From Malacoraja senta (Eukaryota), in the NCBI GenBank assembly GCA_038087875.1, contig CM075985.1, forward strand, positions 7,936,001 to 8,000,000: a stretch of DNA of 64,000 bases, given 5' to 3'. A model generated the notes under the pieces. The model made no database searches and was not told where the DNA came from. It worked only from the letters and a program-made list of their open reading frames with translations. A program made the position numbers and the translations under genes. This document shows positions 3,998-27,900 of the stretch, piece after piece. Position 1 is the first letter of the stretch, and every line of letters starts with the position of its first letter.

Positions 3998-4111
3998 TCA
4001 CTGAAGAACTGGGCTGTACACAGTCTCCTCCTCCTCCTCCTCCTTTCTAGCTCCCCGTGTCGTTGCCCATTGCAGTTTGGCATAGCAGATCTCCTCCTCA
4101 TTGGTTTCATT
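3998..4111 (-). CDS. Terminal cytoplasmic exon with ITIM (ICYAKL) and ITSM (TVYSPV)
   Basis: Acceptor TTTTGCCTTTTTTGTAG; NETNEEEICYAKLQWATTRGARKEEEEEETVYSPVLQ*; stop TGA at 4000-3998; candidate AATAAA signals on the minus strand at about 3945-3950, 3931-3936 and 3609-3614. Confidence 0.9.
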   Translation of the reverse strand, partial: NETNEEEICYAKLQWATTRGARKEEEEEETVYSPVLQ

Positions 4112-7100
4112 CTACAAAAAAGGCAAAACACAGTGCATTAACTTTTGTCTTTGTCTGAGGTTTAGTGTGCCAACCACTCAGCATGTTCTCAGTAATCTCA
4201 GTCTCAGTCATCAACAAAGTGTTGGGAAGTGCCAGTGAAGCTGCACTGACTCTCTAATAAATGGTTCACTGATGTCCAGTTCAGGTATTGCCAGATTTTC
4301 ACAGCTCCTGTCCTCATCACCTTAATAAATAAATTCAAACTCACGAGCCTGCTTCTGGTCTGGCTACGTGGAAATCACAGAGGGGACAGAGCAACATTTG
4401 CTTTGAATAAGAAACCGTAGAGTACTAAATATACATTCTATAGTTAAAAAATAATTAAATACTAGACTAAGTGGGACCCGTTGGGGGGGGCTGGTCCTGT
4501 CCTCATCTCCTTTCAGAGGTGAGAATATTGACTTTGCAGATGGCCAGGTACGATATTCTGTATCCTTGGCCAGTCAATAGTCAATGGGCATCAAGGAGAA
4601 ATCACTCCAATATGCAATTATACTTCAAAGAAAGCAAAATAGTACTTTACTGCCGATCACTTATACCATCTATCAGATATCTCATCAGGGGTTCCTCCAG
4701 GCAATGTGCTATGCCCAACAATCTTTCGGCACCAAGCGAAAATAACCATTTGCACTGACCATATCCAACAAGTGTGACGGTAACCACCTACCCTTGACAT
4801 TTAATGGCATTACCATTGATGAATCATCTAGTTTTGTTTCATTTATTATTGTTACACTATTTACCAAAAATTCAATAGGATCACCCATTTAATTACTGTT
4901 TCCTCACCATGTGATGCATAGTAGCATCACTAGCCTACCAGTAGCAGGCACAGGTTATTGATTGGGGACGATCAGCCATGATCACAATGAATGGCGGTGC
5001 TGGCTCGAAGGGCCAAATGGCCTCCTCCTGCACCGATTTTCTATGTTTCTATTTCTAATGAGTTGTTTGCTTGATTTTGTAATTGCAATTAAAACGTTGC
5101 AGGAGTATCCATGGTCCACATTAGGCTATTAAACATTGCCATACATACATTCAAACTCACGAGCCTGCTTCTCCTGGTCTGGTTATGTGGAAATCCCAGA
5201 GAATTCTGAGAGGGGACAGACAAACCAACATTTGCTTTGAATAAGTAACCGAAGAGGACTAAATGTACATTATCTTTTTTAAAAAATCAAATATTTACCA
5301 TGTTATTCCATTCAAGGTTCAAAGTTCGATTACTTTGAATTCTTGTTTGCTCTTGCATTCGTTTCCTTTCTATGAGAAATAATAATGAAGTGGAATAGTT
5401 TTAAAGTCTTTGTAGTAAAGTGAACTATAGTATAAGTAAGTAAGTAAGTAAGTTTATTGGCCAAGTATTCACACACAAGGAATTTGCCTTCGTGCTCTGC
5501 CCTCAAGTAACAACATGACATACAGTGACAGTTACGAATGACTCAAAACACTAAACAATAATAATAAAACATTAATGATAAAACACCATTGATCAAGCAT
5601 GTGAATCAACAAAATACCAGATATCTTATGTCATGTTAGGAATATATTATATAGCTTCAAAAGTAGACATATCTAATAATTTACTTCATATTATTATGTC
5701 AATTTAAAAAAGTGGGACAATAGATGCAAACACGGGATTAATGAAGGGAGAATCATGGTGCAGAATCAGGAGAGCACCTAAAAGTTTGCTTTCGGGAAAG
5801 TTGGCTGTGAAGTCACTTACTGCATGCACATTTTATAAGGAAGAGCACAAGAGGGAAAAGGCAAGCTGTTCCTCCACTTATGGAAAGTAAAATGGAAATC
5901 CAGGTACTCCATTTATGATCTGTGGAAAATTGGAATTGTTAAATCACGTTATGCATGGTCCATTTAAACAACTCCCCAGAACAATTTCAAGTTCAATATG
6001 TTTAATCATTTTATTTATAGAAACTTTTTGCAACTATTAATTTCCCTGCACTTTACAATTTATCTCTACCAATTAATCATTACCAAAGTATAGTTGCAGT
6101 ATTAATAATAATTTATAGTTTGCGTCGTCCCAAAGCTGTTTTCCTTTTGTATAAATGTACAAAGTTCTGTACAAATATAATTTAAGTTATCAATCAGAAT
6201 ATTTTGGCTTGGCCAGTTTATAATGCCATTTCACACCGTTTAATTTGATAAAAACTGGAGTTTGATTTCAATTGGTTAAAAACCCATTGGGCCTGAAAAG
6301 CCAATGAAGATCCTGGGAAAAGTTCTCAAAGAGTGAGGCTTCATCAACGTGACACATTTTTGTTGTTCAAAATAATGAAAATACAGATTCAGATTACTGT
6401 TATAGACTCCAGCAGGACACTGAATTTCTTAGTTTGCATGAAGCTCATAGAGTAAACAATAAATACATGAACAATAAATGCAGTGGCAAATGCAAAACAT
6501 GAGAATGGTGTAAAGATTATAGCGCAATCTGAAATAGTACAAATAAAAGTGTAAAATTGGAAAACTGAGTGAGATAGAGTTAAGAATAAGATTACATGGC
6601 AGCACCTCTGGGGAAAGGGGTGTGAAATGAGATGATTAGTTCAGGAGTTGGATAGCTATGGGAAAGTTGTTGTTATTAAGTCCGGATGTCTGAGCTTTCA
6701 AGGTCCAACTGGGAATGACCAGGATGGCATGTTAATGACTGATCTTTTCTGCTTCTATAATATCATCAACATTAACAAGAGTGGGTTAGCAGATTACCAC
6801 ATTCAGCAAAACAAAGGCGTACAGTTTTGTAAAAAGCAAAGTCCACCTGACAAAGACGTGGATCTGAATGGTTCTCTGAACCCCACTTTTTAAAAAGGGA
6901 GGGAGAGAGAAAACGGGGAATTACAGACCAGTTAGTCTAACATCGGTGGTGGGGAAAATTCTGGAGTCAGTTATTAAAGATGGGATAGCAGCACATTTGG
7001 AAAGTGGTGAGTTCATTGGACAAAGTCAGCATGGATTTATGAAAGGTAAATCATGTCTGACGAATCTTATAGAATTTTTCGAGCATGTAACCAGTAGAGT

Positions 7101-10100
7101 GGATAAGGGAGAACCAGTGGATGTGTTATATCTGGACTTTCAGAAGGCTTTCGACAAGGTCCCACATAAGAGATTAGCATACAAACTTAAAACACATGGT
7201 ATTGGGGGTTCAGTATTGATGTGGATAGAGAACTGGATGGCAGACAGGAAGCAAAGAGTAGGAGTAAACAAGTCCTTTTCAGAATGGCAGGCAGTGACTA
7301 GTGGGGTACCGCAAGGCTCAGTGCTGGGACCCCAGCTATTTACAATATATATTAATGATCTGGATGAGGGAATTGAATGCAACATCTCCAAGTTTGTGGA
7401 TGACACGAAGCTGGGGGGCAGAGTTAGCTGTGAGGATGCTAGGAGGCTGCAAGGTGACTTGGATAGGTTGGGTGAGTGGGCAAAGGCATGGCAGATGCAG
7501 TATAATGTGGATAAATGTGAGGTTATCCACTTTGGTGGCAAAAACAGGAAAGTAGACTATTATCTGAATGGTGGCCGATTAGGAAAAGGGGAGATGCAAC
7601 GAGACCTGGGTGTCATGGTACACCAGTCATTGAAAGTAGGAATGCAGATGCAACAGGCAGTGAAGAAAGCAAATGGTATGTTAGCATTCATAGCAAAAGG
7701 ATTTTAGTATAAGAGCAGGGAGGTTCTACTACAGTTGTACAGGGCCTTGGTGAGACCACACCTGGAGTATTGCGTACAGTTTTGGTCTCCTAATCTGAGG
7801 AAAGATATTCTTGCCATAGAGGGAGTACAGAGAAGGTTCACCAGACTGATTCCTGTGTTGACAGGACTTTCATATGAGGAAAGACTGGATAGACTCGGCT
7901 TGTACACGTTTGAATTCAGAAGACTGAGGGGGGATCTTATAGAAACTTACAAAATTCTTAAGGGGTTGGACAGGCTAGATGCAGGAAGATTATTCCCGAT
8001 GTTGGGGAAGTCCAGAACTAGGGGTCACAGTTTAAGGATAAGAGGGAAGACTTTTAGGACCGAGATGAGGAAATCATTTTTTACACTGAGAGTGGTGAAT
8101 CTGTGGAATTCTCTGCCACAGAAGGTAGTTGAGGCCAGTTCATTGGCTATATTTAAGAAGGAGTTAGATGTGGCCCTTGTGGCTAAAGGGATCAGGGGGT
8201 ATGGAGAGAAGGCAGGGATGGGATACTGAGTTGGATGATCAGCCATGATCATATCAAATGGCGGTGCAGGCTCGAAGGGCCGAATGGCCTACTCCTGCAC
8301 CTATTTTCTATGTTTCTATGTTTCTATCTCGGCCCAGGACTGTTACCAAAGTTGATCGTTGACCTAAGGAAATAGGGCTGGGGAGAGGGATGAACCCAAC
8401 CGTGTCCTCATTAACTGAGCGGCTGTGAAGATGGTCGACAGCTTAATGTTTCTTGGTATCTCTATCAGCAGCAACCTAACCTGGTCCCTTGACACTAATG
8501 CAGTGATCAAGAAAGCTCATCAGCGCATTTACTCTCTTATGTGCCTGAGAAGATTCAACATGTGCACGAGGATTTTCTTAAACTTCTATAGATGCACTAC
8601 CGGATGCATTGTGAAGGATGCATCTCAGAATGGTATGGGATCTGCTCTGTTCTTGACCATCTGAACCTGCAGAGAGTAGTGAACACAAAACAGTCCATCA
8701 CAGGACACAAAATGCTGGAGTACTGTAACTCAGCAGGTCAGGCAGCATCTTTGGAGAAGATGGATAGGTGCTGTTTCAGATCAGGACCCTTCTTCAGACT
8801 CACTCACCCTGACCTGCAATGGTTATTTTGTTTACCTGCATCTCCAGTCCATCACAGGCTTGTCTCTTCCTTCCATACAGTCCACCTTCATGGTGCATTG
8901 CATCAGGGAGGCTGGAAGTATTGTCAAATGTACCTGCTGTCCCGGCCATTCCTTTTTCTCCCTTCTACCTTCTGGGAGAGGATAGAGGAGCTTGAAAGCC
9001 CAGATGTCCAGAATTAAGAACCACTTTCCCATTGCTAACAGACTCCTGAAGCAATCATCTATTTTTCAACCCATTTCCAGAGATGCTCTATCTCATTTGA
9101 TTATTCTATTATTGTATTTTAATATTCTTTTACACTATATGGATTTTGCATGACAATCGTGCACGATTCTGCTGTTTTGCACTCGTCATCATATTGTTGT
9201 ATTTATCATTAGTGTATGTTTACTGTTACACTGTGAGCTTCGTATGAACAAGGAACAAGGAACACCCTCTTGGAGATGATAATAAACTAATCTGATCTGA
9301 ACTTGGGACTAAAACTTCTTGTTTTGAAGGCTTTATTATTTATAACTTCCACCACATTTAAAAATCAATCCACCTCTCCATTCAAATGTTGTGCTCAGGT
9401 TTTCCATTTTCTATAACTATTTTCAATTGTTTTGTTTATTTAAGTCCTTTTCTTTCTTGTTATTAGTTTATGAAATTATTTTATAGTGAGATCTTTAATT
9501 TTGTTTACATAAAGTTATTTGATTTCACTTTCCTAGTTAATTTATTTTTAAATGCTTTAACATATTTGAATTATTTCATCAGTATATTCACCTTCCAGAT
9601 CGGGTTTTGTACTTTTCATTTTCTTTAAAAATAACAAGTGCACAAAGTTATTTCTGGATTAGACCTGGTCAGACATATACTGAACTAAAAGATCAATTTG
9701 CTGACCTTTAGAAATAGCACAACACCAAAAACCACAAAACATGTTTTTCATGAATAGAGGAAATGGAAATGTGTGCGGAAAATGTTTGCACACTTTCTAG
9801 GTCATGTAAAGTGACATCGTTTTGTAATTCCTAAATTTAGTTTAGAATCAAATCCAGCTTTCGGATCCATATTCTAATGACATGTTTTACTTTTTAATTA
9901 GAAATTATATCTATATATATAATTTCTAATAAAAAAGTTTAATGTAATTAGAATAAGGATATATATATATATATATATACCTATTTGATGACTCAGACTA
10001 TCCTTGATCGGATATTGATGGCTTTACCTTGCATTAAACATTATTCCCTTATCAAATATCTATCTATACACTGTAAATGGCTCAATTGCAATAAAGTATT

Positions 10101-13100
10101 GTCTTTCTGCTGACTGAATAGCACGCACCAAATGCTTTTCTGTACCTCGGTACATGTGACAATAAACTAAATTAAAACTAAAATAAAAGTTTTGAATTGT
10201 AACAAAGGTAAATGTCGTGGCTGATTCCTACTCAACAATATCTGGAAAACAACAGCATGATGTATACCAGTTCATGTATGGATGGAATGTTTTCCGGGAT
10301 AATGTTTACATGCCATTATGGGAGTTTAAACTTCAGACTTGAATTAGAATGTTGCCAAGTAAATCAAGCTGAAAGTAGAAAGGACATTTCCTGAGCTCTC
10401 AGAATGGTGTGTCACATTGCTTCTACTAGAGTCGGGTTGCAGGATGGCTGAGCAATTTGCGCGGGGTTTGAGTAATTCACAGACACACACACACGATGCA
10501 AACTGGTCCAATCGTCAAGTCAACTGGATCTAAACCACATCTAACAATGAATGACCTGTGGAGGAGGGAACTGTAGATGCTGCTTTTGGATGGAGGGAGG
10601 GAGTGACTGAGGGTAGGTGAAAGGAGAGGGAGGGAGAGGTGAGGGAGGGATTGGGGAGGGGAAGAGGAGAGGGGACCAGGCCTCCCGTGTGACAGGGAGC
10701 CAACAGGTCCCACTTAATCTAGTTTATCACAAAAATTCTGTTAATATGGTATGATTGTGCCATTTGAGAAGGTTCTGGTAAGTGAGGAGCTACCTATATG
10801 GCAGAAATGAATGGCCTTGCCCTCCCCAAATCCATTGGTGGCCATGTGATGCTACGACTGTCTGTTCCATCGGACTGTATATGCTGGCATAATATTCATA
10901 ATGTGCATGCTATCCATGTGTTGAGGTATCATATGTTCAGCTTAAAGTCCTTGTTTCCACTTGCCAACTTTATGTTTATTGCGGATGCTCAAGCACTGAA
11001 GACAGTGGATCACCAAAGAATAAAGGTGTTAATACTGCTGCCAGAATACTGGGCATGCTTGTGCATGCACTGGCTATTAAGGGAATGATTTTTTTACCAG
11101 TTGTGGTACATCCCTGTGTTGATATGTGAAGCCTGCAATGCGGCATGGGTGCAGTCAATGACATTCAGCAGCATTGAGAAGACAACAACCATTCCAAATG
11201 TGTGTGCTCAATCCACTTGCTTGTCCCTAGCAAGAACAAATATGTAATCTGCTGGAAGACAATGGTGACTTCCCTTAAACAAAAGTGGATGGCAAATCAG
11301 GAAATAACATGAATATTTCCAGCTCTGGTTGGAAAGGAACCCAACGTGTATAAATTTGTTATCATGGAGCCCTTAGCAGCCACAGGCAAAGCAGCTCACA
11401 CAGGGCATCAGATCCTACCCAAACAAAGGACACTCATGGCAGTATTTTGCAGTCACAGTGTTTACATGTAGTTTATCATAATGAATGTTTTTGGGTTAAG
11501 AATTCTACATTCGGATAGAGAGCACTGATACGCTTCCTCTTAATTCTTCAACTTGCAGCAGCCGGAATATTAACCTGTTAATTTCCAGAATTGAATGTTA
11601 AACTCCAGAAGTCTGGTGACTTTGCTATAAACATTTCTTTCCCCAGTATGCATGGTTCTTCACCAAGAATCCAGCGTGTGAACTCTGATTCTCATTCCTG
11701 TCACATAATTATAAATTCTTGTTCATTTCCACAAAGGAGGCACAACTTTATTTCTTGATATCATTTTGTTGATATCAGGAAATAAAACTGTGCCTCCTTT
11801 GAGGGTGTCATAAATCAGGAAGAGCAGAGATTGTATGACAACTAAGTAATTCAAGTGAAAAACAACAATTAGCTAGCCAGAAAAATAAGGTGTGCCTGTT
11901 AAAAAGTAAATTTGGCCTTCTTTATCTCTATCACACTTTCTTTATATCTAGTAAAGCATTTATTTTACAACACATTCCAGCAGGGGCTTTGTTGGCCTTC
12001 CTGCTGAATTGATTCTATGATTCCATCCTACCTTGAGCAACTGTATGAACATCAATGATGATAGTACCATTTAGCTCAGTCTGTGATGCTGGATGTTGAA
12101 CTACACATGTGAATTCAGTGGAGTTGGAGCAATTTTCTGTGGAGATGCTAAATGTTTCAGTGTAGTTATAGGTTCCATTGGGATTGGTTGCGTTGCTTAT
12201 ACTGATGAGCCTGAAGGTGAGACAGGTTGGTTGTATCCAAAATTTAATAATATTTGGATAAAACCCATATGCTAAGCATGTAATGTTAATTGATGGTGAA
12301 GAAGAAATCTTGTCGTAAGATTCCAGGAGCCAAAGAGAAGGACAAGCTGGTTATAAAAAAAAGAGATAGATTAGCAATGGTATCATTCTGAAGTGGCATA
12401 TCATTCTTCAAAGATATCCAAATTACATAGGTACTAAATCAGGTTCATATTTTATTACATGAACAGTACTAATTATAAATATACATTTCTTGAAATCAGT
12501 TATGATCTTTATATGCAGACTGAACTCCTGAATATTTTCTGTTGGCTTAATCTACAAATACATTTGGAGCTATCTTGCAGTATTATAATTATACATAATG
12601 TTTTGCTCTTGTTTCCTCATTCTAAAGCATTCATCCCCATCTCTGCCATCCTATTCCCACTATTGTTCCAATCCATGAAGGACTGCCATATAACTAGCCA
12701 CTTTCACACATTTCCAGCCTAACTCGAATACTATGTAGACACAAAATGCTGGAGTAACTCAGTGGGACAGGCAGCATCTCTGGAGAGAAGGAATGGATGA
12801 CGTTTTGGGTCGAGACCCTTCTTCAGACCTATGTATACAGTCATGTGCTTTTTTTTTTATACTCATTCACTTTTATTTTAATTGGCCTTCTCTGACAGTG
12901 GGTCTTGATCATGTTGACTATGCTGTTCCACGATCATTCTTGGCCTCTTGCTTTGGTTGTATCAGCCTTTTCAAATTTCCTCTTCCATCGATGTCAATTG
13001 AATGAGTAAGTTAACCACTATGTTCTCACACAATACTACAACCAACAACCAAATCCTAAATGCTTCCTCACTCCACATAAGAGGTGTCATTTAATACAAC

Positions 13101-16100
13101 AATCTAGTTATCATTTTCAATCCATTCTAATGGTTAATCAGGGATGAACTGAATTAAAGTTATTTCTTTGTTTATCTTCAAGGTAGATGTGTTTGCTGCA
13201 GCCTTCAGTAGATGCAAATCTACTTTCATTTTTTCTTGTCATAAATATGCCATTTGGATTTTTGTAGATCTTAATCAGGAAAATTGTCAGTTTTGTTCAT
13301 AAAGATTCTCTTTTCTCTTCTGTTTCTTCAAAGCTGATCCATAAGCAGTAGAGAATTGACCATTAAGCACATACCATAATTTAGACAATAAAGTACCAAT
13401 TAAATATTGACACAATTTATACATTCGGCAACAAAATGTAAAAAAATCCGATGCTTGTCAACCATGATGGTATGTGCAAAATGTACAGCACAAATAAAAC
13501 ATAGCTTTTATACAAAGGACAAAAGGTCTCAGCTGTGCTGTAAATTTAAAGCAAAATATTTTGTTACCATGTGTAAGAAGGAACTACAGATGCTGGTTTA
13601 AACCAAAGATAAACACAAAAAACTGGAGTAACTCAGGCAGTTTCTCTGCAGAGAAGGAATGTGTGACGTTTCGGGTCAAGAAGTAGGGCCTTGACCCAAA
13701 ACATCAACTATTCCTTCGCTCCAAAGATGCTGCCTGTCCTGCTGAGTTACTCCAGCTTTTTGTGTCTATTTTGTAACCATGATGTGTTCGTTGTGTCAAT
13801 TAAATTCCTGTCTCTAGTATAACAGCATCTGTAGTTCTGGTCTGATTTGGCTAGAAGCCTTGACTATGCCCGATTCTACTGTGCTTCCTCTCTTTGCTGA
13901 TAAATTAACGAAAGGATCTCACTATCAATCTAGATCAAGCACAACTACACTGTCCATTTGAAACACATTTGGCCTCAAGTCTAATTCAGACCACTCTACT
14001 GCTGTAAGAACAAGCATGACTGATTTTAGTCCTAAATTTGTGCCTTTTGATGAAATTAAGTTAAACTTCCTTTATTTCTCACAACAGTGAAAGATATGAA
14101 TAAAATAAAGTCCTTAATAAGATAAATATCATTTGGAAGTATAGATAGTTATCATTGAAATTGATAAATCATGTTACCTTCAATTTTCACACAGACACAA
14201 AAAGTAATTTCAAATATTTCCTTGTTCTGACAAAAGGATAAAGATATGAAATATTTATTCTGTTTCCTTTTCTACAGACTCTGCCTACTGCTATAGCCAG
14301 TGTTTCCTGTTTTTATTACAGTTATCTCAAAAGTAGGTCCAACCTGCCAAAAATGTGTGTCCTAAACCTTCCTAATCTGGACCACTAAGGACAAATTAAG
14401 AACTCCAGCCAGCATGCTGAATTAGATCAGCTAACTCACTGCAGTGCGATGACCATATCTGACACATCTCTCATATAACTGACACAACTGTACAAAGTTA
14501 ATTGCTGCAAAAGTTTGCATTAATGTTCCAAGTAAAACTGCCACAAAACTTTTGAAAGAATTAAAAAATATAATTACCAGTTACATTCAGTAGGATGCCA
14601 TTTCCCTTGTCTGTTAAAGTTGGCGGTGGTGCCAACCGAATCACCTCACAGCAGTGGATTCCATTGTCACTGACTTGAACATTGATAATTGTTAAGATGA
14701 ATGCCTTCAATGTAGAATTATGCCTTACGCAATATCGAGAATGAGAAACCCAAGGTTTATCGGTGGATAGGTTTGCGATTATCGTTGAAGAATATGGGCC
14801 ATCATTGCTTAAAAACCACTTTACTGTAAATCTTGATAGATTACGCATGGAATAGGAACAATGTAATGAGATCGAGTGTCCTTTTACAATGGTAAGCGTA
14901 TCAGGTTGTTGTAAATCATTATTTATCTTGTGTACAGCTGAGGAGAGATTCAGAAAATGTAATTTAAATGCCGTATTTCAAAGTTAATCTTCCCCGCAGT
15001 TTTAATTGTAATAAAGGTCACTGTGCTTGTTTGAACCTCCTCTGCGATTTCCACTTGAGTGGTCAACACATTAAATTTCTTTGTTAAAGTAGAGAAACTC
15101 ATATGTTAACAATTCATATTAGTACATTTGCAGCTGTAATTGGAGTACAATTTTAACACTGCTCCTGCATTTTTTTAAATGTAAACAGGGGAATTTTAAA
15201 CATTCAAATACCATAGAACAGAATTGCTTTCAAGATATATTCTATCTCCACTGCAAGAACAGTACTTCCCAAAACAAATCCATTAGGTACCATGTAACAA
15301 CATAATAAGGCATGGAATGGAAAATATTGCCAGCTGTAGCCATTTTATGAACTGAGACTATTATGATATTTTAACAAAATGTCACCAGATAGAAACAAAT
15401 GAACAAATCAAGCAGTATAAGAACTATGAGTTATATAAAGGATAAATGCACAAGGGGTCTCAACACCAGGGGATCATAGGTTTACATGGAATACCACATT
15501 TCTGAATTACAATGAATGTTTTGGAAAGTTTAAATTAATGCTCTAAGTTTAAAAGCTCAAATGGCTGTGGCATGCTACATCATGAAATATAAAAGTGTCA
15601 ATATGTATTAGTCATTTCAACTTAGGAAGCAAAAACACAATTGCGAATGTTCAAGATGGTTTGAAAAGAAAGTAATAGCAAACATTCAGTGTTGCTAACC
15701 CATTTCAATTTCATCAAGTAAATTCAACACAAAATGCACTAACAAAAGTAGAATCACATCAATTTTGCTATCATTCACTTTAACTGTTACATTTCATGCA
15801 ATTCACAACATATAGTATGAACTTAATGCCTATCCAAATTTGATAAAAAATTAAAGAACACAACGTTGGAAGAACTCAGTGGATCAAGCAGCATTTTTGG
15901 AGGCGAAAAAAGATGGTACTATACCAGTATACTATACCAATATTACCATATTAAAAGAACATTTGGACAGTTACATGAATAGGATAGGTTTAGAAGGATA
16001 TGGGCCAAATGCAGGCAGTTGGGACTAGTGCAGTCAGCGTGAGTAAATTAAGCCAAAGGGCCTGTTTCCAGGCCGTATGACTATGGAAAAAAGTGTAGGT

Positions 16101-16353
16101 CAATGTTTTGGTTCGAGGCGCTGATCAGGACTGATTTAGAATTTCAACATGAAATATTGACTTACACTTTTTGTCTTCTGAGATGCTGCTTGATCACCAA
16201 GTTCTTTCAGCACTCTTTTTTAAATTCTTGATTCCAACATCAGCAGCCTCCATTCACTTGGTGAAATCAAATTCTGTATAAAGTATTACACTTGGGTCTC
16301 ATACCTGCACAAGGTATTAACAGCTGTAGGATAATGTAAAATGATGTCTCCAT
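3998..16353 (-). CDS. Non-rearranging V(J)-C1 Ig-superfamily type I membrane receptor with ITIM+ITSM tail (7 coding exons, 350 aa)
   Basis: Exons 16353-16305 (49 nt), 14937-14578 (360), 12346-12032 (315), 5919-5821 (99), 5369-5299 (71), 5205-5161 (45) and 4111-3998 (114) total 1053 nt. All introns are GT-AG, intron phases are 1,1,1,1,0,0, and there is no internal stop. Protein: METSFYIILQLLIPCA-A-VHKINNDLQQPDTLTIVKGHSISLHCSYSMRNLSRFTVKWFLSNDG...DNGIHCCEVIRLAPPPTLTDKGNGILLNVT-A-CPSLWLL...ITCLAYGFYPNIIKFW...FTCVVQHPASQ...VAQ-D-HKWSTWISILLSISGGTACLFPLVLFLIKCAC-K-RKRMQ...ICYAKLQW...TVYSPVLQ*. Confidence 0.9.
4345..4363 (-). other. Diverged duplicate of cytoplasmic exon 2; candidate 19-nt frameshifting micro-exon
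   Basis: 4330-4435 is a diverged copy of 5150-5270. The original acceptor is deleted, a new TAG acceptor lies at 4366-4364, and the GTGAGT donor is retained. Confidence 0.5.
5161..5205 (-). CDS. Cytoplasmic exon 2, NSLGFPHNQTRRSRL
   Basis: Acceptor GTCCCCTCTCAG, donor C|GTGAGT, 45 nt, phase 0-0. Confidence 0.78.
5299..5369 (-). CDS. Cytoplasmic exon 1, (K)RKRMQEQTRIQSNRTLNLEWNNM
   Basis: Acceptor ATTTCTCATAG, donor G|GTAAAT; the only stop-free reading frame is the one set by the TM exon. Confidence 0.8.
5821..5919 (-). CDS. Transmembrane exon, (D)HKWSTWISILLSISGGTACLFPLVLFLIKCAC
   Basis: Acceptor TTTTCCACAG, donor A|GTAAGT, 99 nt, phase 1-1, uncharged hydrophobic span followed by KRKR across the next junction. 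Confidence 0.88.
6715..9300 (+). mobile_element. Degenerate Rex1/Babar LINE, interrupted by a CR1 (6883-8327) and a Penelope tail (about 8705-8845)
   Basis: SLN|I...ELIVDLRK frame joins across the CR1; VKMVDSLMFLGISISSNLTWS...KKAHQRIYSL...NFYRCT; LPSGR-like motif near 8970. Confidence 0.7.
6883..8327 (+). mobile_element. 5'-truncated CR1 (HER1-like) LINE, young copy
   Basis: RT ORF 6946-8229 in one frame with a single nonsense codon at 7705-7707; GVPQGSVLGP, KFVDDTKL; 3' UTR with (CTATGTTT)n tail. Confidence 0.95.
9957..9979. repeat. (AT)n microsatellite
   Basis: Direct reading. Confidence 0.9.
12032..12346 (-). CDS. Ig C1-set domain exon
   Basis: Acceptor TTTTTTTTATAACCAG; C1 signatures ITCLAYGFYP, IKFW, NPNGTY, FTCVVQHPAS; donor G|GTAGGA; 315 nt, phase 1-1; missed by the ORF track because it has no ATG. 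Confidence 0.93.
14578..14937 (-). CDS. Ig V-set domain exon with germline-joined J-like G strand
   Basis: Acceptor TCTCTCCTCAG; Q-P A-strand, B-strand Cys (LHCSY), C-strand Trp (VKWF), LTIINVQVSDNGxxC, GNGILLNV; donor G|GTAATT; 360 nt, phase 1-1. Confidence 0.93.
16305..16353 (-). CDS. Leader (signal peptide) exon of V-C1 receptor, METSFYIILQLLIPCA
   Basis: ATG in strong context (AACATGG), hydrophobic 16-aa stretch, 49-nt phase-1 exon typical of Ig/TCR leaders, donor G|GTATGA. Confidence 0.75.
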
Positions 16354-19274: not shown

Positions 19275-19780
19275 TCAGAAAGCCTTTGATAAGGTGCCAC
19301 ACGTGAAACTGCTAAGGAAGGTGAGAGCCCATGGTATCAAAGGGCAGATACTAGCATGGACTGCAGGTTGGCTGAATGGCAAAAGGCAAAGACTGGCAAT
19401 AAAGGGGGCTTTTTGTGGTTGGCCGCCAGTGGAGTTCTGCAGGGGTCGATGCTGAGGCCGTTACTCTTCACGATGTATATTAATGATTTGGAAGAGGGGA
19501 TTGAAGGCTTTGTGGCCAAGTTTAAGGATGATACCAAAATAGGTGAAGGGGCAGGTAGTGTGGCGAAAGCAGGGACTCTGCAGAAAGACTTGGACAGGTT
19601 GGGAGAGTGGGCAGAGAAATGGCAGATGGAATATAGTGTAGCAAATTGTGCAGGTGTGCATTTTGGTAGTAGGAATAAAGGCGTAGACTATTTTCTAAAT
19701 GGGGAGAGAATCCAGGAATCGAAGGTGCAAAGGGACTTGAGAGTGCTGGTGCAGGATTCCCATAAGTTAATCAGCAAATT
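19275..19780 (+). mobile_element. CR1 RT fragment
   Basis: GVLQGSMLRPLLF...KFKDDTKIG...W..KWQM. Confidence 0.88.
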
Positions 19781-21419
19781 AATCGTGTACATATATCTAC
19801 TCTGAATTCCATCAGAAAACTTTCACTCTATAATCAGGGCTAGTTTTCACTGGTGACTTATTTTAGCAGTATGAAGGATTTCAAGATAATCAGGTAGCAC
19901 AGTGACCTGTTATTTTTTTAAACATTCTGTTAAATTGTAAACCTGAACAATGACATTGAAACTCCAGGTTTGGAAACGTACTGAAACCAGCATTAATGAG
20001 TAAGGGAATTAACAGATATACATTGCCGAATCATCCTGAGGTGGCTGATTGTGGGAGTAGATGTTTGAACAAAAAAAAATCCAGGAGCCAGAATTTGAAG
20101 AACTGGAAGAAATTCTAAGGGGGAATAAGGATATGGCAAAGGAGTTAAACAAATACTTTGTGTCTATGACTAATTCCCCTTGTGAAGTGGTGCTTTACAA
20201 ACTTGAACTGGTTCAGATATTTCCACAATACAGTTGTGAAGGGGAGGAGTGGATCATTTCAATTTAATGTCAACAAAGGAACATTAATATATTTCTGGGG
20301 CAGGATGGTGTAAGTCTTGGAGTGAAGGTTGCAGGTAATGATGTTCCCTTGCAATTGATGCTCTGCTCCTTCCCAGTAGCAGAGGTATCGGGTTTGGGAA
20401 GTGCTGTTGGACAGCCTAGGGGAGCAACAGAAATACATTACATAGATGACACACGCTGCAGCAACTTTGTCACTGCTGGAGTCAATTAAATTTTGGGGTG
20501 TTGGATGGGGTAGTAATCAAGGGAGCTGCTTTTTGTAGGCAGTGTTAACATTATTGGGTGTTGTTGGAACTGCAGTCATCAAGACAAGTGGAGAGTATTC
20601 CATCACATATATCTGACATGTCTTTCAGATGGTGGAAAAACTTTGTAGTGCTCTTGTAATCACAGTGTTTATATGACCAAACCATTTTAGTTACTGGTAG
20701 GTTGTGATCCCGAGGATGTTGATGGTGAGCCACTCAGCAATGGTAATATCAATGGTAAATAATTGGAACCTCTTGCTGAAGAACACTATGGACTTGCACT
20801 TTTGGCACCAATGTTACTTGCCACTCATCAGTTTATGTCTAATGTTGCTCAGATTTGCAGCATGCAGCATGGACTAATTCACTTGTCAAGAATGAAATTC
20901 ACTTGTGAATGAAATTATAAATGGTATGACCAGAAGGGAACATTCTCACCTCTGAGCTTGTCGTGGAAGGAAAATATTTGCTGAAGCAGCTGATGATGGG
21001 ACTAGGACATTGACTTGAGGAACGTCTGCACTGACATCCTAGGATGATTGATTTCCAGCATCCACAATCATCTTCCCCGGTGCAAGATAAAACTCTAGTC
21101 ATTGAAATGTTGACTTCAATTTTACTAGAGCTTGTAGTTCCCACATTCAGTAAAATGCAGTCTTGATATTAAGGGTGAAGATAGATACAAAAGGCTGGAG
21201 TAACTCAGCAGGTCATGCAGCATCTGTGGAGAAAAGTATTAGGTGATGTTTCAGGTCGAGACCCTTCTTCAGATATTAAGGGCTGTCACTTATACCCTGA
21301 TGCATATAATTTAGATCTTTGGGTTATATTTTGATCAAAGACTGGGGACAACTGCTTCAGTTAAACTTAAATTTGGATGAAGCAAGATGGCATTTGGAGA
21401 GTAACTGCGCTTGATTAAA

Positions 21420-22749: not shown

Positions 22750-23770
22750 GGGCCCCTCTCTAGTTGGTGATAGGATGGTTCAGTTGCCTGATAACAGCTA
22801 GGAAGAAACTGTCCTTGAATCTGGAGGTATGCGTTTTTACACTTCTGTACCTCTTGCCTGATGGGAGAAGGGAGTGATCGGGGTGAGACTCATCCTTGAT
22901 TGTGCTGCTGGCCTTGCCGAGGCAGCGTGGTGTAGGTGGATTAATGGAAGTGAGGTCGATTTGCAAGATGGTCTGGGCTGTTTCTACAATTCTCTGCAAT
23001 TTCTTGCAGTCTTGGATGGAGAATGCTGTGATGCATCCTGATAAAATGATTTCCTTGGCACATCTGTGGAAGTTGGTGAGAGTTGTTGGGGACATGCCGA
23101 ACTTCTTAAGCCTCTGAAGGAAGTCAAGACATTGGTGTGCTTTTGTGGCCATTGCTTTGATATGGCTGGTCCAGGACAAGTTGTTGGTGATATTTACTCC
23201 GAAGAACTTTAAGCTTTCAACCATCTCTACTTCAGCGCCATCAATATGAATGAATTAATACTTTATTGTCACATGTGACAAGTCACAGTGAAATTCTTTG
23301 CTTGCATACCTTGGGTATGCAAATAGTCACCACATAAAAGGCACTGACAAAGTCACAAAGTATCCCGCACCAGGTCCTCCTTTGTTCTCCCCCCCCCCCC
23401 CCCATGCCGGGTCCTCCTTTGTTTTCCTCTCCCTTCACAGCGGTCCCCCCATACCAGAGTATGTGTACCGCTTTGCTTGCCGAAGTCGATCAATCTCCTT
23501 TGTCTTGCTGACATTGAGGGAAAGGTTGTTGTCTTGGCACTAGGTTACGAGGTTGTCAATCTCCTTCCTGTACTCCATCTCGTCATTATTTGGTATCTGA
23601 CCCCCTACGATGTTGCCTGCAAATTTGTACATTGAGTTGGTTTTGCATGTGGCTGCACAGTTCTGTGTGTACATGGAGTGAACAAGGGGGCTGAGGATGC
23701 CTCTTTGCGGGGCATCGGTGTTGAGGATTATCGTCGTGGATGATTTGTCACATGTCCTCAGGCCCTCTCA
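22750..23770 (-). mobile_element. Rex1/Babar LINE fragment with a nested short insertion (about 23235-23500)
   Basis: VESLKFFGVNITNNLSW...KAHQCLDFLQRLKKF...LPSGKRYRS...RFKDSFF. Confidence 0.85.
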
Positions 23771-24920: not shown

Positions 24921-27900
24921 TTCGCAGCAAATGAAACAATTGTAGCTGCATGACGGAATACCTCAGTAACATTCACGAATGGGCTGACAGGTGGCAAATA
25001 TTATTTGTGCTGCCAAAGTGTTGGAAAATAAAGAGAGTCTAACTTCCTGAGACTATTTTGCTGAGTCCTGCACCATCAATATCCTGTGGTCAGGATTTGA
25101 TCAGAAATTCAACGACTGGCTGGCAAAGCAGGTCAGAAGTTGACTATACAGTGACACAAGAGCCACTGGAGAGGAACCTATAACCTGGCAGGCAGGTTTG
25201 CTAGTGTTACGCAGTTGTGTTTAAACTAGATTGGCAGGGGTGTGGGATCCAGTGCAGGTGAGAGGCTCAAAGTTGGTATGGAAGGTGATTAAAGAAAATT
25301 CAGTGGACAGGCAAGGAGCACAGTGGGATTAAATTGTACGTATTTTAATGCAGGAGGCGTGACAGACAAGGTGGATGAACTCAGGGTCTGGATAGGTATG
25401 TGTGACTGGGATGTTGCAGCTGTTATGTAATTGATTAAGAAGAATGTCACGGCAGTGGTCTGAAACGATATTACCAACATCAATCGGGCTATTTGGGTGG
25501 TCAAACTCATCATGCAACGGTGAAAGCAACAGGTGTCCTAAATTTTCTGAGACGCAACTTTCATTACTGTTCAACTTCTGTCAAGGAGAAGCTATACTTC
25601 ACCCTCGTTAGACCTCATTTGGACTACGCAATTGCAGCATGGTACCCATACACAAATAAAAACATTTCTTCCATCGAACGTGTCCAAAGACAGGCAGTTC
25701 GATTTGTTACTAATACCTATGAGAGAGAAGTGAGTGTTACCAAACTTCTGAATTCACTGGGGTGGAACCCTCTCCAAGACAGACGTGAAGCTCACCGTTT
25801 GACCTGTTTTTACAAAATGCTAAATGGCCAGCTCGACACAGATTACAAAACCTACACCAAACCCAAACCAATCAGGAGCAGACGAGGGCATTCGATCCAA
25901 TTTGAGATTCCAGCTACCAAGACAGATGTGTACAGTAATTCATTCTTCCCTCGCACAATTAAAGCATGGAATAGTCTTCACCCTAACATAGTTACCCAAT
26001 CAGATGCAACAAAATTTAAGGTAGCTCTTCCCAAGAACCCCTTCTGGCTTAAGTCCTTCCTCCACCACCTCCAGTTTATATTCCATTTGGAATATTTTGG
26101 AGGACCAAGAAACCAAGGAAACCAAGCTGAGAAATATAAAGCGACATATAATCTGAAGAAGGATCTCGACCCGAAAAGTAGCCTATTTCCTTCGCTCCAT
26201 AGATGCTGCCTCACCCGCTGAGTTTCTCCAGCATTTTTGTCTACCTAATATAAAGGAAACGATCACCTTGTTGAGAATGTACGATAGGTCCCCAAATATC
26301 AGCGGGAATTAGAAGAAAAAATATAGGCCTGGATATTACATGCAGCTATAAGACAAATTGTCATAGGGGATTTAAATGTTACCAATATAGTTTGGGACTG
26401 TCAGATTTAGGAAATTGGTATGGGCAAGTGACTGATGTGTCCATGGGTGAGCCATTTGGGAACAATGACAATCATTCTGTTAGTTTTAAAATAGTTATGA
26501 ATAAGAAATTCAGTCTATGAAAGTAAGCATGCAGGTACAGCAGGCAGTGAAGAAAGCGAATGGCATGTTGGCCTTTATAACAAAAGGAATCGAATATAGG
26601 AGCAAAGAGGTCCTTCTGCAGTTGTACAGAGCCCCAGTGAGGCCACACCTGGAGTATTGTGTGCAGTTTTGGTCCCCTAATTTGAGGAAGGACATTCTTG
26701 CTATTGAGGGAGTGCAGCGTGGGTTTACAAGGTTAATTCCCGGGATGGCGGAACTGTCATATGCTGAGAGAATGGAGCAACTGGGCTTGTACACTCTGGA
26801 GTTTAGAAGGATGAGAGGGAATCTCATTGGAACATATAAGATTGTTAAGGGTTTGGACACGCTAGAGGCAGGAAACATGTTCCCGATGTTAGGGGAGTCC
26901 AGAACCAGGGGCCACAGTTTAAGAATAAGGAGTAAGCCATTTAGAATGGAGACGAGGAAACACTTTTTCTCACAGAGAGTGGTGAGTCTGGAATTCTCTG
27001 CCTCAGAGGGCGGTGGAGGCAGGTTTTCTGGATGCTTTCAAGAGAGAGCTAGATAGGGCTCTTAAAAATAGCAGAGTCAGGGGATATGGGGAGAAGGCAG
27101 GAACGGGGTACTGATTGGGGATGATCAGCCATGATCACATTGAATGGCGGTGCTGACTCGAAGGGTCGAATGGCCTACTCCTGCACCTATTGTCTATTGT
27201 CTATTGAAATTCTGAATTGTATATTATTCAAAAACTAGACTGAATGAATTCTATCCAAATACTTCTCCCATTTGTGATAAATGTTTATCTCAAAATGCCA
27301 CTATAATACACTCTTCTGTTTCCTGCATAAAACTTCATAAATTCTGGAGCGATATCTTTGAAATATTTACAACATTATTCAAGGTAAAAATGGAGCCTAA
27401 CACAGAAATGATTATACTTGGAGTAACAGAAGACGGGAACAAATTGAATACATTTCAAAATTCAATTTTTAATTATGGGTTAATAACGGCAAAAAAACAT
27501 ATACTTAAATTTTGGAAAAATACACCCATTCCAACGTTTAAAATGTGGATTTCAAACATGTTGGACACCGCACATCTTGAAGAAATGCGATTCCACCTAA
27601 GACAAATCAGACCAATTCTTAACGAGTTGGTCTCCATTTATCGACTTCTTGGAAGCATATGGTGCAACAAAATCGTAGAAACCAACTGTTTCAGGACTGG
27701 GTGAAGGATGGTCAAGAATATAAATAACTATCTCCTATAATCTCCTACTCTCTTTCTCTTTCTCTCTCCTTTTTTTAAAAAACTTTCCCTCTTTCTCCCC
27801 TTTTCCTTTTCACACACCATACATCACATGTTTTTCTATTTTTTATTACCTACTCTCTTTTTCTCTCTTTTATTGTTAAAAAAAAAAAAACGAAGCTGTA

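What the first reader, a model, noticed from the sequence alone, without database searches (positions are those of the whole stretch)
14578..14937. CD28/CTLA-4-like V domain joined to a C1 domain
Seen: the F-G region DNGIHCCEVIRLAPPPTLTDKGNGILLNV has a triple-proline loop and a GNG motif, and there is a D-strand Cys (SRYCVRH). Established: CTLA-4 reads [29 protein letters not shown] and has a D-strand Cys; PD-1 has an ISLAPK FG loop; described CD28-family receptors have a single V ectodomain. Inference: a CD28-type ligand-binding face (LAPPPT in place of MYPPPY) on a V-C1 scaffold could link costimulatory receptors and antigen receptors, and might bind a B7-family ligand.
Basis: partly seen in the sequence, partly recalled or inferred. 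Interest (0 to 1): 0.75.

Follow-up and report, generated by a model that had tools for sequence, protein, structure and literature searches.

The report
Skate inhibitory receptor with CTLA-4-like loop
This skate gene encodes an intact cell-surface inhibitory receptor built like one antigen-receptor chain, whose tip loop carries the same proline motif as the T-cell brake CTLA-4; it belongs to an old, poorly named gene family that mammals appear to lack.

Summary
Window 14578-14937 (minus strand) is one V-set exon with CEVIRLAPPPTLTDKGNG. It is spliced in phase to a C1-set exon in an intact six-exon gene (16353-3998). The 335-aa product has a signal peptide, germline-joined V(J), C1, a membrane anchor and a tail with two ITIM-type tyrosines (ICYAKL, TVYSPV).

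Orthologues exist in rays, sharks and a chimaera. Relatives with the same V-C1 layout exist in gar, amphibians, turtles and alligator. All keep YxCx6PPPx5GxG; one ray has PAP. This is the CTLA-4/CD28X signature with identical spacing.

The CTLA-4 likeness is confined to the F strand, FG loop and G strand. Without that segment the V domain matches Ig light chains, TIM-4 and TCR alpha, and no CD28-family protein reaches the top 60. The gene fails the published single-V definition of the CD28 family.

It most likely belongs to the non-rearranging V-C1/ITIM family published as PRARP (Fu 2019). I could not test this: the paper is not held and no bird sequence was reached. B7 binding is untested.

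The scan also noted a CD28/CTLA4-like FG motif on a three-Ig receptor elsewhere in this genome.

Verdict: a real gene, and a new member of a known kind.

The parts
16305..16353 (-). Exon 1: start codon and signal peptide METSFYIILQLLIPCA; donor G|gtatga, phase 1
   Evidence: It aligns with the Narcine orthologue leader MRISFYLFLQIQIPFA.
14578..14937 (-). Exon 2: germline-joined V(J) domain, which is the finding itself. It has no recombination signal heptamer.
   Evidence: V-set 2.9e-14; pLDDT 92; no CACAGTG in the exon.
14597..14629 (-). FG loop and start of strand G: PPP (14621-14629), TLTDK, GNG (14597-14605). This is the CTLA-4/CD28X-type signature.
   Evidence: Conservation is shown. One search gives the ungapped alignment to a CTLA-4-like chain ([22 protein letters not shown]).
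14729..14731 (-). Extra Cys in strand D (SRYCVRH); present in batoids only
   Evidence: strand D is 66-71. Cys in the skate, Hemitrygon and Narcine; Ser/Tyr/Phe in sharks.
12032..12346 (-). Exon 3: C1-set domain (ITCLAYGFYP...FTCVVQHP) with an extra conserved Cys pair (QPTC...ENC); phase 1-1
   Evidence: C1-set 1.7e-6; best PDB relatives: Ig mu/IgY constant domains, UrIg2, SIRP-gamma, B7-H3.
5821..5919 (-). Exon 4: stalk and transmembrane segment DHKWSTWISILLSISGGTACLFPLVLFLIKCAC
5299..5369 (-). Exon 5: cytoplasmic KRKRMQEQTRIQSNRTLNLEWNNM; ends in phase 0
3998..4111 (-). Exon 6 (coding part): NETNEEEICYAKLQW...TVYSPVLQ, then stop. It holds an ITIM (ICYAKL) and an ITSM/ITIM (TVYSPV) 22 residues apart.
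   Evidence: The two motifs lie 19-23 residues apart in all elasmobranch orthologues, gar and axolotl.

Best explanation
The stretch is the V exon of an intact six-exon gene (minus strand, 16353-3998). The gene encodes a 335-aa type I membrane protein: signal peptide, non-rearranging V(J) domain, one C1-set domain, transmembrane segment, and a tail with two ITIM-type tyrosine motifs about 20 residues apart.

It is the skate orthologue of an ancient jawed-vertebrate family of V-C1 inhibitory receptors. The family is found in chimaera, sharks, rays, gar, bichir, amphibians, turtles and crocodilians. No motif-bearing relative whose source I looked up was mammalian. Databases name its members only as 'SIRP-alpha-like', 'Ig kappa light chain-like' or 'uncharacterized'. 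It is most probably the family published as PRARP.

Likely mechanism (inferred): the membrane-distal V domain binds a still unknown ligand through the face that carries the rigid, invariant PPP-x5-GxG loop. Src-family kinases then phosphorylate the two tail tyrosines. The pair docks the tandem SH2 domains of SHP-1/SHP-2 and dampens activation of the cell.

The PPP-GxG loop is the same signature as in CTLA-4, CD28 and CD28X. The rest of the V domain is generically antigen-receptor-like. The resemblance is therefore at loop level, and it is open whether it reflects shared ancestry or convergence.
For: Gene model:
- All splice sites are canonical, the phases are compatible and the reading frame is open.
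- Every exon is matched by ray and shark orthologue proteins.

Domains:
- V-set and C1-set by Pfam.
- The V model has pLDDT 92. The V-C1 model of the Narcine orthologue has pLDDT 89, and both domains match TCR and Ig chains and UrIg2.

Family:
- 25 proteins at E<=1e-10; taxa and names.
- The motif is invariant across the family.
- Tree: skate + Narcine 94/83; elasmobranch lineage A + osteichthyan clade 99/99; SIRP outside at 100/100.

Tail motifs are conserved.

CTLA-4 likeness:
- Swiss-Prot Foldseek ranks 3-7.
- CTLA-4 fills ranks 3-22 (apart from three other chains) for the E-F-G segment, and is the first hit for the gar member.
- The paralogue lineage passes Pfam's ICOS V-set cut-off and hits ICOS and CD28.
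- Language-model neighbours are PD-1 and CTLA-4 clusters.

The signature and the single-V definition come from PMC11599192. PRARP is cited as a VJ gene in PMC10751288.
Against: - There is no transcript evidence for this genome. The runs found were genomic DNA with even ~25x depth over introns.
- The PRARP identity rests on my recollection of the 2019 abstract. The paper is not held, and profile searches reached no bird sequence.
- The ligand, phosphorylation and SHP recruitment are all inferred from motifs.
- The second tail motif is a strict ITSM (TxYxxV) only in the skate and Chiloscyllium.
- The skate ectodomain has three extra cysteines, an odd number, of unknown pairing.
- Outside the FG region, no CD28-family protein reaches the best 60 PDB matches.
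Confidence: 0.7

Rival explanations
1. Deep homology with the CD28 family. The V-C1 family would be sister to, or an ancestral-type form of, CD28/CTLA-4/ICOS/CD28X. The PPP-GxG loop would be inherited and would bind a B7-family ligand. Single-V costimulatory receptors would have arisen by loss of the phase 1-1 C1 exon.
For: - The spacing Cys-x6-PPP-x5-GxG is identical to CTLA-4 and CD28X.
- The motif is invariant over the chondrichthyan-osteichthyan split.
- CTLA-4 is the best non-rearranging structural match.
- Lineage B scores above the gathering threshold of Pfam's ICOS V-set model (33.2 and 30.8 bits against 28), and ICOS and CD28 rank 4-8 in PDB.
- C1-skipped, otherwise identical isoforms are predicted in axolotl (P0074 against P0076).
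Against: - With the F-FG-G segment removed, CD28-family proteins drop out of the best 60 PDB hits for both lineages.
- TCR V-alpha matches as well or better.
- The tail carries ITIMs, not YxxM/YxNx motifs.
- The gene is absent from the 2024 CD28-family survey and its supplements.
Confidence: 0.2
2. Convergence. The family is simply a non-rearranging antigen-receptor-like V-C1 chain. Its CDR3-equivalent loop became stiffened by prolines independently of CD28/CTLA-4, and the ligand is unrelated to B7.
For: - Residues 1-94 match Ig light chains, TIM-4 and TCR alpha best.
- The top Foldseek hits are TCR V-alpha.
- The two-domain model matches TCR and Ig chains and UrIg2.
- GxG is the general J-motif bulge shared by all VJ domains (PMC11599192).
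- Proline-rich FG loops also occur in CD28H relatives with other spacing.
Against: - The exact spacing of Cys, PPP and GxG is shared with CTLA-4.
- CTLA-4, not TCR or Ig, tops the list for the C-terminal segment.
- The Pfam ICOS model is passed by lineage B.
Confidence: 0.45
3. A SIRP-family member, as NCBI's automatic names suggest, working like SIRP-alpha on a CD47-like ligand.
For: - Automatic names read 'tyrosine-protein phosphatase non-receptor type substrate 1-like'.
- It has a VJ domain, a C1 domain and ITIMs, as SIRP-alpha does.
- SIRP-gamma and SIRP-alpha C1 domains are among the C1 hits.
Against: - SIRPs fall outside the family with 100/100 support on long branches.
- SIRPs have three Ig domains and an FG loop without PPP (P0112 reads KFKKGNPDTEFKSGGGT).
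- SIRP matched the skate V domain only at E 2e-4, against 1e-18 to 1e-48 for family members.
Confidence: 0.05
4. A decaying or unexpressed gene copy.
For: Introns are packed with LINE and other repeats.
Against: - The 335-codon frame is open across six exons with canonical splice sites.
- It is 63% identical to Narcine over the ectodomain, with all structural residues kept.
- The sister skate sequence is 91% identical in the V exon.
Confidence: 0.05

Closest known systems
[quoted passage not shown]
   Same: As I recall the abstract: non-rearranging VJ exon with a J-like motif, V-C1 ectodomain in bony fish, amphibians and reptiles, a transmembrane protein with a cytoplasmic ITIM, linked gene pairs, and no mammalian member. 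The gar, axolotl, turtle and alligator clade found here has exactly these features. It joins the elasmobranch genes with 99/99 support.
   Different: I recall PRARP being described from chicken and other bony vertebrates, and no cartilaginous-fish member. The equivalence was not tested here. I do not know whether the PPP signature was noted in that paper.
CTLA-4 / CD28 / CD28X (CD28 family, PMC11599192)
   Same: The signature YxCx6PPPx4/5GxG sits in F strand, FG loop and G strand with the same spacing. It is a VJ-type V domain. CTLA-4 is the best non-rearranging structural match.
   Different: - The skate protein has an added C1 domain, whereas the family is defined by a single V.
- It has no stalk cysteine.
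- Its tail carries ITIM-type motifs instead of YVKM/YMNM/EYEDM.
- The N-terminal 94 residues show no specific CD28-family similarity.
- Tyr is replaced by His before the Cys in this skate.
PD-1 (and CD28HL3)
   Same: A V domain followed by an ITIM and then an ITSM about 20-25 residues apart. The PD-1 cluster is the nearest language-model neighbour.
   Different: PD-1 has no conserved FG prolines (PMC11599192) and no C1 domain. The 'LAP' shared with ISLAPK is found only in this skate.
SIRP-alpha
   Same: A VJ domain plus C1-set domains and ITIMs that recruit SHP-1/2; an inhibitory receptor.
   Different: SIRP-alpha has three Ig domains, no PPP loop and four tyrosines. It forms a separate clade.
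TCR and Ig chains; shark UrIg/UrIg2 (PMC12227049)
   Same: V(J)-C1 chain fold. The V domain is most like TCR V-alpha and Ig light-chain V.
   Different: The V exon is not split by recombination signals. UrIg and UrIg2 have several further C domains after the V (three C1-type domains in UrIg, nine C domains in UrIg2), and UrIg is secreted. This gene has one C1 and an inhibitory tail.

Membership tests
CD28/CTLA-4 family (as defined in PMC11599192) | Single extracellular IgSF V domain | tested here: not met
   A C1-set exon follows the V exon in phase. Orthologue proteins have V-C1.
CD28/CTLA-4 family (as defined in PMC11599192) | CDR3-region motif of the CTLA-4/CD28X type: YxCx6PPPx4/5GxG | tested here: met
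   The skate has HCCEVIRLAPPPTLTDKGNG. Orthologues have Y at the first position. The motif is invariant in 20 of 21 V domains, and the alignment to CTLA-4-type chains is ungapped.
CD28/CTLA-4 family (as defined in PMC11599192) | V domain as a whole groups with family members | tested here: inconclusive
   - The whole V domain hits PD-1 at 3.5e-4 and CTLA-4 at 1e-3, among Ig and TCR chains.
- In Foldseek, CTLA-4 takes ranks 3-7.
- Residues 1-94 alone give no CD28-family hit in the best 60.
- No tree with CD28-family sequences could be built.
CD28/CTLA-4 family (as defined in PMC11599192) | Family-type cytoplasmic motif (YxxM, YxNx or EYEDM; or ITIM/ITSM as in PD-1 and CD28HL3) | tested here: inconclusive
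   The tail has ICYAKL and TVYSPV. This is like PD-1 and CD28HL3, but the same module occurs in SIRP, Siglecs and many other receptors.
CD28/CTLA-4 family (as defined in PMC11599192) | Conserved synteny with a known family locus | not tested
   The window holds no marker gene, only repeats around the gene. Chromosome-scale context is not available to me.
CD28/CTLA-4 family (as defined in PMC11599192) | Binds a B7-family ligand | not testable with these tools
   This needs binding assays.
PRARP family (Fu et al. 2019) | Non-rearranging single VJ exon with a J-like GxGTxLxV | tested here: met
   The exon runs through GNGILLNVT to the donor site. It holds no heptamer. The family consensus is GxGTxLxV.
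PRARP family (Fu et al. 2019) | V-C1 ectodomain, transmembrane segment and cytoplasmic ITIM | tested here: met
PRARP family (Fu et al. 2019) | Orthology to chicken PRARP1/2 | not testable with these tools
   The paper is not held. Profile searches reached no bird protein, and the atlas gave no such name. The family features are recalled from memory.
SIRP family | V + two C1 domains; groups with SIRP in trees | tested here: not met
   The gene has one C1 only. SIRPs fall outside with 100/100 support.
Rearranging antigen receptors (TCR/Ig) | V and J separated by recombination signal sequences | tested here: not met
   V and J-like parts lie in one exon with no CACAGTG.
UrIg / UrIg2 | VJ followed by three or more C domains; secreted, or a ten-domain protein | tested here: not met
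   The gene has a single C1, then a transmembrane exon. The family description comes from PMC12227049.

The most novel reading that the evidence does not exclude
The V-C1/ITIM family is the surviving two-domain form from which, or beside which, the single-V CD28/CTLA-4 receptors arose. The PPP-x5-GxG loop would then be homologous in both and would contact a B7-family ligand in cartilaginous fish. That would tie costimulatory and checkpoint receptors directly to the antigen-receptor-like V-C1 stock. Loss or skipping of the symmetric phase 1-1 C1 exon, seen as predicted isoforms in axolotl, would be the step that made a CD28-type receptor.
Probability: 0.12. Interest if true: 0.8.

Novelty: new member of a known kind. 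Interest (0 to 1): 0.45.

Why it matters

A V-C1 receptor family that predates the split of cartilaginous and bony fish, and that carries the CTLA-4/CD28X loop signature unchanged, is a concrete candidate relative. It makes the question testable by masked-loop phylogeny, synteny and B7 binding.

Even if the loop is convergent, the result has value. It gives a correct name and gene model to a set of immune genes that public annotation mislabels as SIRP-alpha-like or kappa light chain-like. It would also extend an inhibitory-receptor family, thought of as bony-vertebrate, to sharks, rays and chimaeras.

Tried and rejected
1. RNA support. The look-up of sequencing runs gave only runs with even depth over introns, so they are genomic DNA. 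No splice evidence was obtained.

2. PRARP test. The 2019 paper, the 2022 review, the UrIg 2023 paper and the 2019 'primordial immune complex' paper are not held. Word-seeded profile searches (A1, A3) returned only turtles, axolotl, Bombina and chimaera, with no bird. Atlas and AFDB-cluster names were generic.

3. Family profile against PDB. The best 60 were multi-domain antibodies and pIgR whose domain scores add up, so the list was useless for ranking. I replaced it with single-sequence and split-domain searches.

4. No tool delivered those sequences as usable ids, and I did not type them in.

5. cis-trans-cis geometry of PPP.

6. UrIg was considered and rejected (several C domains after the V; UrIg is secreted). 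SIRP was rejected on the tree. A pseudogene reading was rejected because the frame is intact.

7. My first translation was out of frame, and my first V-exon start (14929) was a codon boundary.
Full report
OBSERVATION

Reading the minus strand in the right frame (my first try was out of frame) gives one open exon. It has acceptor ctcctcag| at 14937 and donor ACTG|gtaatt at 14578. It encodes (A)VHKINNDLQQPDTLTIVKGHSISLHCSYS...WF...SRYCVRHNSTLKAFILTIINVQVSDNGIHCCEVIRLAPPPTLTDKGNGILLNVT.

Pfam calls the exon V-set (E 2.9e-14). An AlphaFold2 model built on 21 family V domains has mean pLDDT 92. It places the extra Cys in strand D, PPP at the F-G turn, and GNG at the break in strand G.

About 2.2 kb downstream on the same strand, 12346-12032 is a second exon (acceptor ccag|, donor CAAG|gtagga). 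It scores as C1-set (E 1.7e-6) and reads ITCLAYGFYP...FTCVVQHP. Its nearest solved relatives are Ig mu and IgY constant domains, shark UrIg2, SIRP-gamma and the C domain of B7-H3.

THE GENE

I found six exons:
- a leader exon, 16353-16305;
- the V exon and the C1 exon described above;
- a stalk/transmembrane exon, 5919-5821;
- two cytoplasmic exons, 5369-5299 and 4111-3998.

All have AG/GT boundaries. The phases are 1,1,1,1,0, and the joined frame is open for 335 codons. tblastn with the Narcine, Hemitrygon, catshark and sawshark proteins hits every one of these exons and nothing else in the window.

The tail ends ...EEICYAKLQWATTRGARKEEEEEETVYSPVLQ. This is an ITIM followed 22 residues later by an ITSM/ITIM.

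The V exon holds no recombination signal heptamer, so V and the J-like part are germline-joined.

I could not get transcript evidence. The public runs that hold this sequence cover introns and exons evenly at about 25x, so they are genomic. Support for the splicing is therefore comparative: RefSeq models of the orthologues have the same architecture.

THE FAMILY

An exhaustive HMMER search with the V exon found 142 proteins at E<=1e-3, of which 25 were at E<=1e-10. The close ones are:
- a sister-skate fragment (91% identical);
- the rays Hemitrygon (62%) and Narcine (57%);
- the sharks Stegostoma, Scyliorhinus, Rhincodon, Heterodontus, Pristiophorus, Heptranchias and Chiloscyllium (42-55%);
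- a chimaera fragment.

More distant members with the same V-C1-TM layout come from gar, axolotl (a tandem pair, one of them V-C1-V-C1), Bombina, sea and land turtles, and alligator. The bichir protein retrieved (isoform X2) is V-only. A second chondrichthyan lineage ('B': Callorhinchus LOC103180135, Pristis, Hemitrygon, Pristiophorus) also belongs here.

Public names are 'SIRP-alpha-like', 'Ig kappa light chain-like', 'protein turtle-like' or 'uncharacterized'. None of the motif-bearing proteins whose sources I looked up was mammalian.

A maximum-likelihood tree of the ectodomains gives:
- skate + Narcine, 94/83;
- elasmobranch lineage A together with the gar/tetrapod clade, 99/99;
- lineage B apart, 95/98;
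- SIRPs outside, 100/100.

Several branches are long, and the program warns about them.

THE MOTIF

Across 21 V domains the columns Cys, P101, P103 and the first Gly are invariant, and P102 is at least 90% conserved. Only Narcine has PAP. The pattern is YxCx6PPPx5GxG.

[quoted passage not shown] HMMER aligns the skate segment FILTIINVQVSDNGIHCCEVIRLAPPPTLTDKGNGILL to a CTLA-4-type chain, [38 protein letters not shown], without a gap.

Two of his side observations are weaker:
- The D-strand Cys is confined to batoids and has no C'-strand partner.
- 'LAP', recalling PD-1's ISLAPK, occurs only in this skate.

HOW FAR THE CD28 LIKENESS GOES

Evidence for the likeness:
- Foldseek against Swiss-Prot models ranks TCR V-alpha first, then CTLA-4 of five species at ranks 3-7, CD28 at 13 and PD-1 at 22.
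- For the gar member, CTLA-4 is the top PDB sequence hit (6e-6).
- Lineage B passes the gathering score of Pfam's ICOS V-set model and hits ICOS and CD28 at about 2-6e-5.
- Language-model neighbours of the skate V domain are a PD-1 cluster (0.96) and a CTLA-4 cluster (0.93). These are leads only.

Evidence limiting it, from splitting the domain:
- Residues 60-117 (strands C'' to G, with the FG loop) are matched mostly by CTLA-4, at E about 0.01-0.04.
- Residues 1-94 are matched by Ig light chains, TIM-4, TCR alpha, CRTAM and pIgR, with no CD28-family chain among the best 60.
- The same holds for lineage B.
- Against PDB, TCR V-alpha chains fill the first 44 ranks, and CTLA-4 appears at rank 45 with a similar TM-score.

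The likeness is thus concentrated in about 40 residues around the loop. Shared ancestry and convergence both remain possible. I could not build the tree with CD28-family sequences, because none could be obtained as usable ids.

WHAT IT IS A MEMBER OF

The CD28 family is defined by a single V domain, conserved V and tail motifs, and synteny (PMC11599192). This gene fails the first criterion. It is also absent from that paper's text and supplements.

UrIg and UrIg2 have several C domains after the V. SIRPs are a separate clade.

The best fit is PRARP. It is cited in PMC10751288 and PMC11599192 as a non-rearranging VJ gene. As I recall the abstract of Fu et al. 2019, PRARPs are linked pairs of VJ genes with an ITIM. 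They have a V-C1 structure in bony fish, amphibians and reptiles and a degenerate C1 in birds, and they are absent from mammals. The gar/axolotl/turtle/alligator clade found here fits this point for point. However, I could neither read the paper nor retrieve a chicken sequence. The identification is probable, not shown.

MECHANISM (INFERRED)

This is a type I inhibitory receptor. The two-domain model of the Narcine orthologue (pLDDT 89) superposes domain by domain on TCR and Ig chains.

The invariant rigid loop sits at the membrane-distal tip, where CTLA-4 and CD28 contact B7. That makes it the likely ligand contact, or at least a strict structural requirement.

Two ITIM-type tyrosines 19-23 residues apart are kept in all elasmobranch orthologues, gar and axolotl. 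This spacing is typical of bidentate docking of SHP-1/SHP-2. The ligand, the expressing cells and any dimerisation are unknown.

Because the C1 exon is phase 1-1, skipping it keeps the frame. Axolotl models X1 and X2 differ by exactly that exon. This gives a simple route between V-C1 and single-V receptors.

VERDICT

The gene is real, intact and conserved. It is best filed as a cartilaginous-fish member of a known kind, the non-rearranging V-C1 inhibitory receptors (probably PRARP). Its CTLA-4/CD28X-type loop is a family-wide feature that may not have been pointed out before. Interest is moderate. It would be high only if the masked-loop phylogeny, synteny or B7 binding showed true kinship with the CD28 family.

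Noticed in passing
P0066, P0085, P0026, P0060, P0174 (not in the window): There is a second chondrichthyan V-C1 lineage ('Ig kappa light chain-like', Callorhinchus LOC103180135). It has the same PPP-GxG loop, a YSCQVNH C1 and a tail ending xIYxxLGQ. Two members score above the gathering threshold of Pfam's ICOS V-set model. In Hemitrygon it lies on a different chromosome-sized contig from lineage A.
   Followed up: partly
P0074 vs P0076 (axolotl); P0002 (Hemitrygon isoform X4): Predicted isoforms differ by exact removal of the C1 exon, giving a single-V, CD28-like layout in axolotl. In the ray, both C1 and the transmembrane exon are removed. This is possible because the exons are phase 1-1.
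   Followed up: no
P0012 (axolotl XP_069483859): A tandem neighbour of the axolotl gene encodes V-C1-V-C1, with the PPP loop in both V domains. Cyprinid 'hemicentin-2-like' proteins (P0051, P0064) repeat a V(PPP)-C unit in a similar way but lack GxG.
   Followed up: no
window 14578-14937 and 12032-12346 (precursor residues C86, C112, C138): The skate ectodomain has three cysteines beyond the two canonical pairs and the conserved extra C1 pair. They lie in strand D, in the x position of YxC (HCC), and in the V-C1 linker (ACPSL). The number is odd, so there is a free thiol or an interchain bond. Sharks lack them.
   Followed up: partly
window 6880-8226 (+): A LINE reverse-transcriptase fragment (RVT_1, E 6e-34) sits inside the 6-kb intron between the C1 and transmembrane exons. 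More RT-like frames lie at 19293-19802, 25439-27053 and 22763-23254.
   Followed up: partly
window 37103-37807 (+): A Tc1/mariner-type transposase fragment (HTH_Tnp_Tc3_2, E 1.8e-16).
   Followed up: partly
window 12736-12828, 13569-13769, 15958-16082: Short intronic stretches have word depth in the millions in four genomic runs of three related species, so they are very high-copy repeats (SINE-like). They gave thousands of spurious joints in read laying.
   Followed up: no
The orthologue-supported reading frame joins exon 5 (phase 0) directly to exon 6 and does not need it. Including it would shift the last exon into the frame that lacks ITIM and ITSM.
   Followed up: partly
P0127 / P0167 (Carcharodon LOC121286047 / LOC121286045): These are single-V white-shark proteins with an NPPS-x5-GNG loop. 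One has a long tail with several ITIM-like tyrosines. They may be V-only relatives of this family or unlisted CD28-family members.
   Followed up: no
window 50572-50919 (+): An open frame reads ...[30 protein letters not shown].... It reminded me of acyl-CoA thioesterase/BAAT-type proteins, but Pfam gave no hit at E<=0.001. It is a possible exon of a neighbouring gene, unverified.
   Followed up: partly
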